A DNA stretch of 63,403 bases, filler included, from Intoshia linei (lineage: Eukaryota > Animalia > Orthonectida): the NCBI GenBank assembly GCA_001642005.1. It is 7 parts of 7 records of this genome, joined end to end, with 100 filler letters (N's around TTAATTAATTAA, not from the genome) between each part and the next. Parts side by side here need not be neighbours in the genome. Positions count along the whole stretch, not along the records: positions 43,814 to 47,237 come from LWCA01002191.1; 6 more parts are not named here. One strand, 5' to 3'. The notes beneath the pieces are model-generated. The model was not told where the DNA came from. It made no database searches and saw only the letters and a list, made by a program, of their open reading frames with translations. This document shows positions 43,814 through 47,237 of this stretch, piece after piece (position 1 is the first letter of the stretch; every line of letters starts with the position of its first letter). Position numbers and translations under genes: made by a program.

Positions 43814-44143
43814 GCTTACAAGTGAATAATCTTTTCTGAATTTCAGACTGAATATATAATCGGGTTCATATTTACAAATTAGAAATTAATTTAACACAAG
43901 AAATTTGACACTCGAAAATATTAAATATTTTATTTTTTTAATATTTTTATAATTTTTCAAAAAATATAAAAATATCAACTCGGGCTTTGCCCAAGTAGCC
44001 CGAGTTGGAAAGTCGCCACTGTAATAGTAATAATAGTAACTAGAATATTTAAAAATTTATACTTATTTACTATTATTATTATTTCTATTTCGTCTGATAG
44101 AATCTGTTTAAATTCTTAACATTAGTTAATTACATTACATTCA

Positions 44144-44520
44144 TTAAATAGTAATTGTGATAAATAATGAAATAATTCTGTAAAAATCTTTTAAGTTTTT
44201 AATAATTGCCATATCCAAAAATTGCAATTTGCAGGTTGTATTGGGTGGAAGATATAGCAACCGAATGGAAACCAAAAATTCGATAAGAGTTTTGCAATGA
44301 GCACTGCAGTTATCTAGAACCAATAGCACTTTACGATTTTTTTTTGATTTTAAATCAATTATATGCAACTATTCTTCAAATAGCAAGGTCAGTCATTCAA
44401 GCATTTTCATTTTTCCTATAAAGTAATGGAAAGTTATCATTATCTTATCCCGAAAAACATCTGGGATTCTTTGATTTTCCAATCATAAATAAGGGCAATT
44501 TTTCAATTTACGGTAAACGG
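44144..44520 (-). mobile_element. pogo/Tigger DDE domain remnant
   Basis: RKVLLVLDNCSAH...YLPPNTTCKLQFLDMAIIKNLKDFYR. Confidence 0.85.
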
Positions 44521-44931
44521 TAATGTTCACTGATGAGTTAAATACTAGAAAAAACAATTTATTTCATGAATTATAGATTTTATAAATATAGATTATAATT
44601 TCGACAATATTATAAATGTAAGTGAATAAGAATCTTTAAAAATTTTTATGAACAAAAATTGGTTTTAAAATTATAATGTTAGCAATCAGCAGATCTACGT
44701 AATAACCATTTTACTCATTTTGTATACACCATAGTATATTTCTATAAATGGCAAGAATTCTTACAAACAACTAAAATTATAACTTTTATTTATAACGTAT
44801 GTGATAATATGTAAATAATCAAACAACACAATGTCTTGTTCATCTACATTAATAAGTTAATAACTAAATATTATTTATATATTATTATAATACAATTATA
44901 TTACATTATTATACATATAAATTTGTATTAC

Positions 44932-45564
44932 CTATTGAATGTTAATCAAATCAGTATGATGAATGTGTTCCATTATCACGCCATTCCATTTAGCATAACT
45001 GGTTGGATTATTGTCATTATTTAATTTGTAAATGTGATATAATGTTAATTGCATTAATACATCCATAAAAAGCTTTGAAAAAAAGGTGCAATTATGGCAA
45101 ATAATACTTATTGAATATAAATAAACGATAGTATAAATAGCGTAGTTCATTTTCAATAAATTTGTATCAATTGGTTCATTTAGTATATATACGCAAATAA
45201 CAGCAAATAAAACAAAATTTAAATATACCATAAATGTTATGGTATATTTATTCAAATTAGATTTGTTTAAGTTTTCAGTTATAGCGGAAAAATATGGATA
45301 AACAGTGTCAATTTTCAAGATATATTTAATTTGTATTAGAACATAACGAAAATATAATTCAATCTTCCATATTATTTCTGAAATAACATTAAAAAATGCA
45401 ATACAAATTATAATAGCCGTGTCATATCTTCCATTTCCAATTCCATTTGTCAAACTGTTAATATCAACTTCAAATATTTTGCGACTGCCAATTTCAATTT
45501 CTTCGCAATTCATATTGAGTGAAAGAAATGCTAGCATTATCAATATAATAAGAATTTTGTTCAT
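44932..45564 (-). CDS. Orphan signal-peptide, multi-pass membrane protein, copy A (210 aa)
   Basis: Long ORF in AT-rich DNA with a signal-like N-terminus (MNKILIILIMLAFLSLNMNC|EE) and several hydrophobic segments. A canonical short 5'-UTR intron (GTAAGT...CCCAG) lies just upstream, and a paralogous ORF is adjacent. Confidence 0.7.
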   Translation of the reverse strand: MNKILIILIMLAFLSLNMNCEEIEIGSRKIFEVDINSLTNGIGNGRYDTAIIICIAFFNVISEIIWKIELYFRYVLIQIKYILKIDTVYPYFSAITENLNKSNLNKYTITFMVYLNFVLFAVICVYILNEPIDTNLLKMNYAIYTIVYLYSISIICHNCTFFSKLFMDVLMQLTLYHIYKLNNDNNPTSYAKWNGVIMEHIHHTDLINIQ

Positions 45565-47181
45565 ATTCGTAAATAAATTTAATCAAATATTTAACCTGGG
45601 TGCTGTGTTGTTAAAAAATAAATTAATACTTACGTAAATAAATAAAAGAATTAGAAAATTTAAAATTAGATAAGTTTACACATTATGCAGTGTTGCCAAA
45701 AATTTGTATTTTTAAAACCATTTTTAAATAAGAGAATCTGGACCAAACTACATATTAGTTATATTATTTACATATTAGTGAACATATTACAAATTATGTA
45801 TCAATTATCGACTACATAATAAATTAAAATTATAGGCCAGTTTTAATTTTTAAAAAAAAAGGGTAATCTGGTTTTTAACGTGAAAATTATCTTTTTTAAG
45901 GTTACCATTTATGATAATGCTTATGAATTTAAAAACCATCCAAGAATTTATGTTGTATAAAATTCAAGGACTTTCTTAATTTTAACAAAAAAGGGTAATT
46001 TGATAAAAATATAAGATTTTTAAATTATCATAATATTGATGAAGCACTATATTTTAGATAANCATTATCACGCCATTCCATTTAGCATAACTGGTTGGAT
46101 TATTGTCATTATTTAATTTGTAAATGTGATATAATGTTAATTGCATTAATACATCCATAAAAAGCTTTGAAAAAAAGGTGCAATTATGACAAATAATACT
46201 TATTAAATATAAATAAACGATAGTATAAATAGTGTAGTTTATTTTCAATAAATTTGTATCAATTAATTTATTTGATACATAATTCACAATGGCAAACACT
46301 ATAACAACTATCAAATATATGATAAGTGTTATGGCATATTTATTCATATTAGATTTGATCAATAATTGATAAATCTCAAGTATATCTGAAGCAGATGGAT
46401 AACCAGTGTATATTGCAAAGATATATTTATATATATATATATTCGCCACTATAATCCAATAATTAATATATAATATATCATTCCATATTATTTCTGAAAT
46501 AACATTAAAAAATGCAATACAAATTATAATAGCCGTGTCATATCTTCCATTTCCAATTCCATTTGTCAAACTGTTAATATCAACTTCAAATATTTTGCGA
46601 CTGCCAATTTCAATTTCTTCGCAATTTATATTGAATAAAAGAAATGCTAGCATTATCAATATTGTAAGAATTTTGTTCATATTCGTAAATAAATTTAATC
46701 AAATATTTAACCTGAGTGCTGTGTTGTTAGAAAATAAATTAATACTTACGTAAATAAATAAGAAGAATTAGAAAATTTAAAATTAGATATGTTTTTTACA
46801 CATTATGCAGTGTTGCCAAAAATTTGTATTTTTAAAACCATTTTTAAATAAGAGAATCTGGACCAAACTACATATTAGTTATATTATTTACATATTAGTG
46901 AACATATTACAAATTATGTATCAATTATCGACTACATAATAAATAAAAATTATAAGCCAGTTTTAATTTTTAAAAAAAAAGGGTAATCTGGTTTTTAACG
47001 TGAAAATTATCTTTTTTAAGGTTACCATTTATGATAATGCTTATGAATTTAAAAACCATCCAAGAATTTATGTTGTATAAAATTCAAGGACTTTCTTAAT
47101 TTTAACAAAAAAGGGTAATTTGATAAAAATATAAGATTTTTAAATTATCATAATATTGATGAAGCACTATATTTTAGATAA
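44971..47181. repeat. Direct duplication of about 1.1 kb (44971-46061 and 46063-47181) joined at a single N
   Basis: The units are nearly identical except for the central coding block; N at 46062. Confidence 0.9.
46063..46680 (-). CDS. Orphan signal-peptide membrane protein, copy B (3' end cut at the N junction)
   Basis: Same N- and C-terminal regions and 5'-UTR intron as copy A, with a different central 73-aa block. Confidence 0.7.
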
Positions 47182-47237
47182 TTGTTTGTGTTTAACTTTT
47201 CATATAACCAACCAAAAAAATTAATTTTTACATGATA

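What the first reader, a model, noticed from the sequence alone, without database searches (positions are those of the whole stretch)
44932..46680. Orphan membrane-protein pair with near-identical flanks and an exchanged hypervariable in-frame block
Seen: the two 1.1-kb units are almost identical in their non-coding DNA, 5'-UTR intron, N-terminal region and C-terminal region. Between IIW and IDTNLLK they differ strongly (65 versus 73 aa; about 45172-45366 versus 46264-46482), and the net 24-nt indel keeps both frames open. Coding sequence far more divergent than adjacent non-coding sequence is the reverse of the neutral expectation. Inference: a lineage-specific surface-protein family diversified by segmental gene conversion, cassette exchange or balancing selection, as in host-interaction, antigenic-variation or self-recognition systems. 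I recognise no family. Because the join is a single N, the copies may be two alleles rather than tandem paralogues.
Basis: partly seen in the sequence, partly recalled or inferred. Interest (0 to 1): 0.8.

Follow-up and report, generated by a model that had tools for sequence, protein, structure and literature searches.

The report
Orphan gene duplicated across assembly gap
Two near-identical copies of a gene with no known relatives meet exactly at a one-letter assembly gap, so they are most likely two variants of one gene stacked by the assembler; the real oddity is a 200-base coding stretch that differs by a third between them.

Summary
The sequence observation is correct. Unit 1 (44971-46061) and unit 2 (46063-47181) are 97.5-100% identical, except for one in-frame coding block (45173-45364 against 46265-46480). 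That block is 67% identical in DNA and 29/65 in protein, with in-frame indels of 15 and 9 nt.

The ORF is far longer than chance allows in 22% G+C DNA (216 open codons; the maximum in 3000 shuffles was 157). It has no relative in Pfam, in a word search of 5.8 billion clusters, or in a HMMER scan of 1.84 billion representatives.

The "pair" is probably not a pair. The piece is a whole 3424-nt WGS record (LWCA01002191.1) made of two contigs joined by one N. The last 1091 nt of the left contig dovetail with the first 1119 nt of the right contig, and the N sits exactly at the unit junction. This is the "duplicated overlapping contigs" signature of haplotypes that failed to merge. I rate this about 75-80% likely; read depth is needed to settle it.

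What remains is one orphan membrane-like gene with a sharply bounded hyperdivergent allelic block (dS 0.43 against 0.027 in the flanks, dN/dS about 1). Gene conversion, balanced polymorphism or assembly chimerism could each explain the block, and two sequences cannot separate them. Interest is modest.

The parts
43814..46061 (.). Left contig of the record (2248 nt); its last 1091 nt form unit 1
   Evidence: the only N is at 46062; the piece is the whole 3424-nt record LWCA01002191.1.
46062..46062 (.). Single N that joins the two contigs, exactly at the junction of the two units
46063..47237 (.). Right contig (1175 nt); its first 1119 nt form unit 2, and only 56 nt at its right end are unique
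44932..45564 (-). Copy 1 of the orphan ORF: 210 codons plus a TAG stop. It has a hydrophobic N-terminus (residues 1-20) and hydrophobic segments at about 47-70, 106-133 and 142-162.
   Evidence: A 201-aa version starting at M10 is on record as P0001, listed under NCBI nr and UniRef.
46063..46680 (-). Copy 2 of the ORF: 206 codons, cut at its C-terminal end by the N. The last 12 codons of copy 1 have no counterpart.
45173..45364 (-). Hyperdivergent in-frame block, version 1 (residues 67-131 of copy 1)
46265..46480 (-). Hyperdivergent in-frame block, version 2 (73 codons; includes a TA-repeat insertion)
45596..45633 (-). Candidate 38-nt GT-AG intron upstream of the ATG (consensus only). Its counterpart in unit 2 is at 46712-46749.
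   Evidence: Read. The median intron of Intoshia linei is reported as 57 bp, most being over 30 bp (PMC6543705). No RNA data were available.

Best explanation
There is one locus, not two. The record is two short-read contigs joined by a one-letter gap. Each contig carries a different haplotype of the same 1.1-kb region, from a heterozygous or pooled sample. They did not merge because a 200-nt block inside the gene is too different, so the scaffolder or gap-filler laid them end to end and produced a false tandem duplication.

The gene is a real, lineage-restricted single-exon gene of about 210 codons. It encodes a small hydrophobic protein with a signal-like N-terminus followed by three or four membrane-like segments. 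No function can be read from homology.

The block is a mosaic tract. Its two versions last shared an ancestor roughly 16 times further back than the flanks did. The most likely causes are recombination that homogenised the flanks around an old polymorphism, or a short gene-conversion tract from an unannotated diverged copy elsewhere in the genome. The frame has been kept open, but the amino-acid sequence is not conserved.

Shown here: the geometry, the divergence figures, the ORF significance and the absence of relatives. Inferred: allelic status, membrane location and the origin of the block.
For: Geometry:
- The suffix of the left contig (44971-46061) dovetails with the prefix of the right contig (46063-47181), and the only N lies exactly at the junction.
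- This matches the 'duplicated overlapping contigs' class of Kelley and Salzberg. In their cow, chicken and chimpanzee assemblies 80-97% of such pairs were erroneous by mate-pair test: 5698/5947, 13159/13571 and 1094/1366 (PMC2864568).
- Ko et al. list a gap between the two copies as a primary mark of false duplications (PMC9516828).
- The right contig starts exactly 126 identical bases before its first variant. A de Bruijn branch at k=127 would produce that.

The gene is real:
- The open frame runs 216 codons, against a maximum of 157 in 3000 shuffles and 152 in 3000 Markov simulations.
- Both versions stay open despite 65 substitutions in 195 aligned sites. The chance of no stop after that many random substitutions is 0.02.
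- Both indels are multiples of three.

Mosaic block:
- In the block dS is 0.43 and dN 0.44; in the constant parts dS is 0.027 and dN 0.022.
- The boundaries are sharp, with a log-likelihood gain of 115.

Orphan status: searches found nothing but the protein itself.
Against: - No reads, depth or mate pairs could be examined, so allelic status rests on geometry and on published base rates.
- A de Bruijn assembler could also break a true tandem duplicate at the unit junction.
- The 226-nt identical run at the right junction does not fit the k=127 reading.
- The two copies show no purifying selection: dN/dS is about 0.8 in the constant parts (only 9 changes) and about 1 in the block, and hydropathy is not conserved at replaced positions (r=0.08, p=0.31). 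Coding status therefore rests on ORF length and frame preservation alone.
- The AlphaFold model is uninformative (pLDDT 41).
Confidence: 0.6

Rival explanations
1. The two units are true tandem paralogues. A 1.1-kb segment was duplicated head to tail. Gene conversion keeps the flanks about 98% identical, while the central block has escaped homogenisation or is selected to differ. Copy 2 would then end two codons after ...NGVIM.
For: The record places the units in tandem. A short-read assembler would also tend to break a true tandem repeat at the repeat boundary and leave a minimal gap. The sharp identity boundaries are what conversion tracts produce.
Against: The gap sits exactly at the junction, and the right contig is 95% duplicate sequence (1119 of 1175 nt). 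In the three draft assemblies, 80-97% of such overlapping pairs were artefacts. Copy 2 would lose its last 12 codons. Identical stretches of 126-226 nt in a true tandem repeat would normally collapse in a short-read assembly rather than be assembled twice.
Confidence: 0.2
2. The block is an assembly chimera. One version of the divergent block belongs to a diverged paralogue elsewhere in the genome and was stitched between the shared flanks by the assembler or gap-filler. No such allele would then exist.
For: The block is bounded by long exactly identical stretches: 138 nt on the N-terminal side and 21 nt on the other side. A graph assembler can switch paths in such stretches. The record is a small, gap-containing scaffold.
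Against: No paralogue was found among annotated or called proteins. The right contig carries its own private SNPs on both sides of the block, as expected of a continuous second haplotype.
Confidence: 0.1
3. The ORF is not a host gene. It is a decaying or unrecognised ORF of a mobile element, and the two units are two element copies.
For: A pogo-type DDE_1 transposase relic lies 560 nt away on the same strand. Amino-acid-level constraint between the copies is not detectable.
Against: The ORF has no transposase, integrase or other Pfam domain. No convincing terminal repeats flank the unit; one search found only weak AT-rich matches. No other copy appears among 1.84 billion representatives, which include this assembly's P0001. 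The ORF is intact in both versions.
Confidence: 0.07

Closest known systems
False 'heterotype' duplications, or duplicated overlapping contigs, in draft assemblies (Kelley and Salzberg 2010, PMC2864568; Ko et al. 2022, PMC9516828)
   Same: Two adjacent contigs align at their facing ends at about 98% identity, with unique sequence only on the outer sides. A gap lies between the copies, and a locally very divergent stretch explains the failed merge.
   Different: The diagnostic read-depth and mate-pair tests could not be run here. The cited surveys are of vertebrate genomes, not this assembly.
Hyperdivergent haplotypes held by long-term balancing selection, for example the hyperdivergent regions of wild Caenorhabditis elegans (from my own knowledge, not checked here)
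   Same: Allelic versions differ by tens of percent while the neighbouring sequence differs by about 2%.
   Different: Those regions span kilobases to hundreds of kilobases and many genes. This tract is about 200 nt inside one gene and is known from two sequences only.
Segmental gene conversion in surface-antigen families, such as Anaplasma msp2, Borrelia vlsE and trypanosome VSG mosaics (from my own knowledge)
   Same: A hypervariable in-frame central block sits between constant ends, with sharp mosaic boundaries.
   Different: Those systems need an archive of donor cassettes. None is present in the piece and no relative is in any database searched. The block also covers hydrophobic segments rather than a clearly exposed loop.
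Taxonomically restricted (orphan) genes of fast-evolving parasites
   Same: The gene has no detectable homologue, is short, has a single exon, encodes a compositionally biased protein and evolves quickly.
   Different: Nothing distinguishes it from that general class. Expression is untested.

Membership tests
False duplication from unmerged haplotypes (duplicated overlapping contigs) | The two copies lie on separate contigs that are neighbours in one scaffold, with a gap between them | tested here: met
   The single N at 46062 lies exactly between the units.
False duplication from unmerged haplotypes (duplicated overlapping contigs) | The alignment is a dovetail of the facing contig ends, with unique sequence only on the outer sides | tested here: met
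   44971-46061 aligns with 46063-47181. Unique sequence is 1157 nt on the left and 56 nt on the right.
False duplication from unmerged haplotypes (duplicated overlapping contigs) | Haploid-level read depth on both copies, and mate pairs that fit better when the contigs are merged | not testable with these tools
   No reads were available.
True tandem gene duplication | Sequence reads run continuously across the junction of the two units | tested here: not met
   The junction is an N, so the record holds no sequence across it. This is not disproof: the reads themselves were not seen.
Antigenic-variation or cassette-conversion system | An archive of silent donor cassettes, or several family members carrying different versions of the block | tested here: inconclusive
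   The 3.4-kb piece holds none. There is no relative among called proteins or JGI metagenomes. The rest of the genome's DNA could not be searched.
Antigenic-variation or cassette-conversion system | The variable block is surface-exposed and under positive selection (dN/dS well above 1) | tested here: not met
   dN/dS is 1.04, differences by codon position are 26/21/18, and the block includes hydrophobic segments.
Transposable element ORF | A transposase, integrase or reverse-transcriptase domain, terminal repeats and many copies | tested here: not met
   The ORF has no Pfam hit, no convincing terminal repeats flank the unit and no other copies were found. The neighbouring DDE_1 relic is a separate, decayed ORF.
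Mitochondrial sequence | Mitochondrial protein, rRNA or tRNA genes | tested here: not met
   There are no tRNAs, no Rfam match and no Pfam match for the ORF. A nuclear-type pogo relic is present.
Known multi-pass membrane families (tetraspanin, claudin/PMP22, MARVEL and similar) | A significant profile match | tested here: not met
   Pfam gave no family up to E=1. The nearest clusters in the language-model atlas are unnamed and score below 0.9.

The most novel reading that the evidence does not exclude
The two versions are long-lived alleles, or true paralogues, of a parasite-specific membrane protein. Its central block would be held diverse by balancing or diversifying selection, for example in host interaction or in gamete or self recognition in an orthonectid, with further versions segregating in the population.
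Probability: 0.12. Interest if true: 0.6.

Novelty: new member of a known kind. Interest (0 to 1): 0.27.

Why it matters
As it stands this is mainly a caution. An apparent tandem gene pair in a draft assembly is most likely one gene counted twice, so gene-family counts for this genome should be checked at gaps.

The residual biology is a 200-nt coding tract with about 16 times the divergence of its flanks, in a gene with no relatives. It would matter only if population data showed that several old versions are maintained. That would point to a recognition or host-interaction molecule in a very poorly known parasite group.

Tried and rejected
- Pfam scan of both copies up to E=1: nothing.
- Word search with copy 1: only the protein itself, P0001.
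- Word search with a 114-aa piece centred on the unit-2 block, to catch fragments from other assemblies of the raw reads: nothing.
- HMMER profile of both copies against 1.84 billion representatives: only the protein itself.
- Language-model and structure atlas: best score 0.88, unnamed clusters, TM at most 0.41.
- AlphaFold2 on the two-row alignment: pLDDT 41. I made no fold search, because matches to such a model would be meaningless.
- JGI metagenome scans by protein pattern and by an exact 29-mer: nothing.
- Rfam and tRNA scans: nothing.
- Exact-protein look-up for other contigs: only the record itself.
- Literature look-ups to tie the accession to an organism: blank. The Current Biology genome paper is not held. 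Assigning LWCA / GCA_001642005.1 to Intoshia linei therefore rests on my memory only.
- Idea rejected: that the versions differ by compensated frameshifts. The DNA alignment shows plain substitutions.
- Idea rejected: that a 16-nt inverted match (46269-46284 against 46912-46927) marks templated repair. By my arithmetic about five such matches are expected by chance in this AT-rich piece.

Full report
**What the piece is**

The range 43814-47237 is a complete 3424-nt public WGS record, LWCA01002191.1 of assembly GCA_001642005.1. From memory, that prefix belongs to the orthonectid parasite Intoshia linei. I could not confirm this with any tool or held paper, so treat the organism as probable only.

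The DNA is 20-29% G+C throughout. It has no tRNA or Rfam match. A decayed pogo-type transposase fragment lies at 44144-44368 on the minus strand (DDE_1, E 6e-10; stops in the same frame further upstream). This points to nuclear eukaryotic DNA, not an organelle.

**Checking the observation**

- Unit 1 (44971-46061) and unit 2 (46063-47181) align end to end.
- Outside one block there are 19 differing columns in 904. Inside it there are 88 in 216. A two-rate model beats a one-rate model by 115 log-likelihood units, with best boundaries 45173-45364 and 46265-46480.
- The block lies between IIW and IDTNLLK of a minus-strand ORF. It is 65 against 73 codons, with two indels of 15 and 9 nt, both in frame.
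- One correction: the two versions are still clearly homologous (67% nt identity, 29 of 65 aligned residues identical). This is extreme divergence of one sequence, not a swap for an unrelated cassette.

**Is the ORF a gene?**

Copy 1 (44932-45564, minus strand) has 210 codons. The stop-free run is 216 codons, against a maximum of 157 in 3000 mononucleotide shuffles and 152 in 3000 second-order Markov simulations of the piece.

Both versions stay open through the block. After 65 random substitutions on version 1, the frame stays open in only 2% of trials, and both indels are multiples of three. A 201-aa form starting at M10 is on record, with NCBI nr and UniRef among its listed sources.

Other signs of coding constraint are absent:
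- dN/dS is about 0.8 in the constant parts, from only 9 changes.
- dN/dS is 1.04 in the block.
- Block differences fall 26/21/18 on codon positions 1/2/3.
- Hydropathy is not conserved at replaced positions (r=0.08, p=0.31).

So frame preservation is shown, but conservation of the protein sequence is not.

The protein has a hydrophobic N-terminus and hydrophobic segments near residues 47-70, 106-133 and 142-162. In T-rich coding DNA such segments arise easily, so 'membrane protein' is an inference.

**Relatives**

None were found.
- Pfam up to E=1.
- A word search of 5.8 billion clusters with copy 1.
- The same search with a 114-aa piece centred on the unit-2 block.
- A HMMER profile search of 1.84 billion representatives.
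- Two JGI metagenome scans.

All returned nothing but the protein itself. The language-model atlas gave only unnamed clusters below 0.9, and its structure matches were below TM 0.45. AlphaFold2 gave pLDDT 41, so I ran no fold search.

The gene is therefore an orphan as far as these databases reach. Unannotated copies in the same genome could not be looked for, because that genome's DNA is not searchable here.

**Pair or artefact?**

The piece consists of a left contig (43814-46061) and a right contig (46063-47237) joined by the only N. The last 1091 nt of the left contig are the homologue of the first 1119 nt of the right contig. The right contig has only 56 nt of its own. The N sits exactly at the junction.

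This is the layout that Kelley and Salzberg call duplicated overlapping contigs: heterozygous sequence split into two contigs that each keep some unique sequence on opposite ends. In their cow, chicken and chimpanzee assemblies, 80-97% of such pairs were erroneous duplications by mate-pair test (PMC2864568). Ko et al. list a gap between the copies as a primary mark of false duplications (PMC9516828).

The hyperdivergent block gives an obvious reason why the overlap was not merged. A small extra hint is that the right contig begins exactly 126 identical bases before its first variant, as a branch in a k=127 graph would. The 226-base identical run at the other junction does not fit that reading, so I give the hint little weight.

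A true tandem repeat could also break at its junction in a graph assembler, and I saw no reads. I put the artefact reading at about 75-80%.

**What the block then means**

If the units are alleles, or variants from pooled animals, the locus carries a roughly 200-nt tract with dS 0.43 between flanks with dS 0.027. On the N-terminal side, 138 identical bases follow the block at once. On the other side, 21 identical bases are followed by a short tail of four differences.

Such a mosaic needs one of three things:
- an old polymorphism whose flanks were homogenised by recombination;
- a short conversion tract from a diverged copy elsewhere;
- an assembly chimera that used a paralogue.

Two sequences cannot separate these. 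Some local mutational processes contribute a little. Version 2 carries a TA-repeat insertion. Version 1 carries a perfect 14-nt palindrome that is imperfect in version 2 (I24), which could reflect a template switch. Neither accounts for 65 substitutions.

**Verdict**

The orphan status is confirmed as far as the tools reach. The 'pair' is most likely one gene assembled twice. The surface-antigen or cassette reading has no positive support: no family, no donors, dN/dS about 1, and a block that covers hydrophobic segments. The hyperdivergent allelic tract is a genuine but small curiosity that read mapping and a population sample would quickly resolve.

The coding sequence is a single exon, so no spliced model had to be joined.

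Noticed in passing
window 44144-44368 (-), continuing with stops to about 44500: A decayed pogo/Tigger-type transposase fragment (Pfam DDE_1, E 6e-10) carrying the LLVLDNCSAH...LPPNTT...LQFLD motifs. It is interrupted by stops, lies 560 nt downstream of the orphan ORF on the same strand, and is outside the duplicated unit.
   Followed up: partly
window 43976-44007: A G+C-rich 11-bp hairpin (CAACTCGGGCT ... AGCCCGAGTTG, 10-nt loop) standing out in very AT-rich DNA beyond the transposase relic. It might be a remnant of the element's end or a chance palindrome.
   Followed up: no
window 45220-45250 against 46320-46350: A perfect 14-nt palindrome with a 3-nt loop inside version 1 of the divergent block. 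The homologous stretch of version 2 is an imperfect palindrome. A template-switch mutation could explain a few of the clustered differences.
   Followed up: partly
window 45511-45548 against 46627-46664: A second, small cluster of differences: 5 nt in 38, about four of them amino-acid-changing (I6T, S15L, L16F, M18I), in the hydrophobic N-terminal segment. It is separated from the main block by 138 identical bases.
   Followed up: partly
window 45824-46002 and 46944-47122: A 47-nt motif ending in AAAAAAGGGTAATYTG occurs twice, 132 nt apart, in the upstream non-coding part of each unit (68-72% identity between the two positions). It may be a promoter-region repeat or chance in AT-rich DNA.
   Followed up: no
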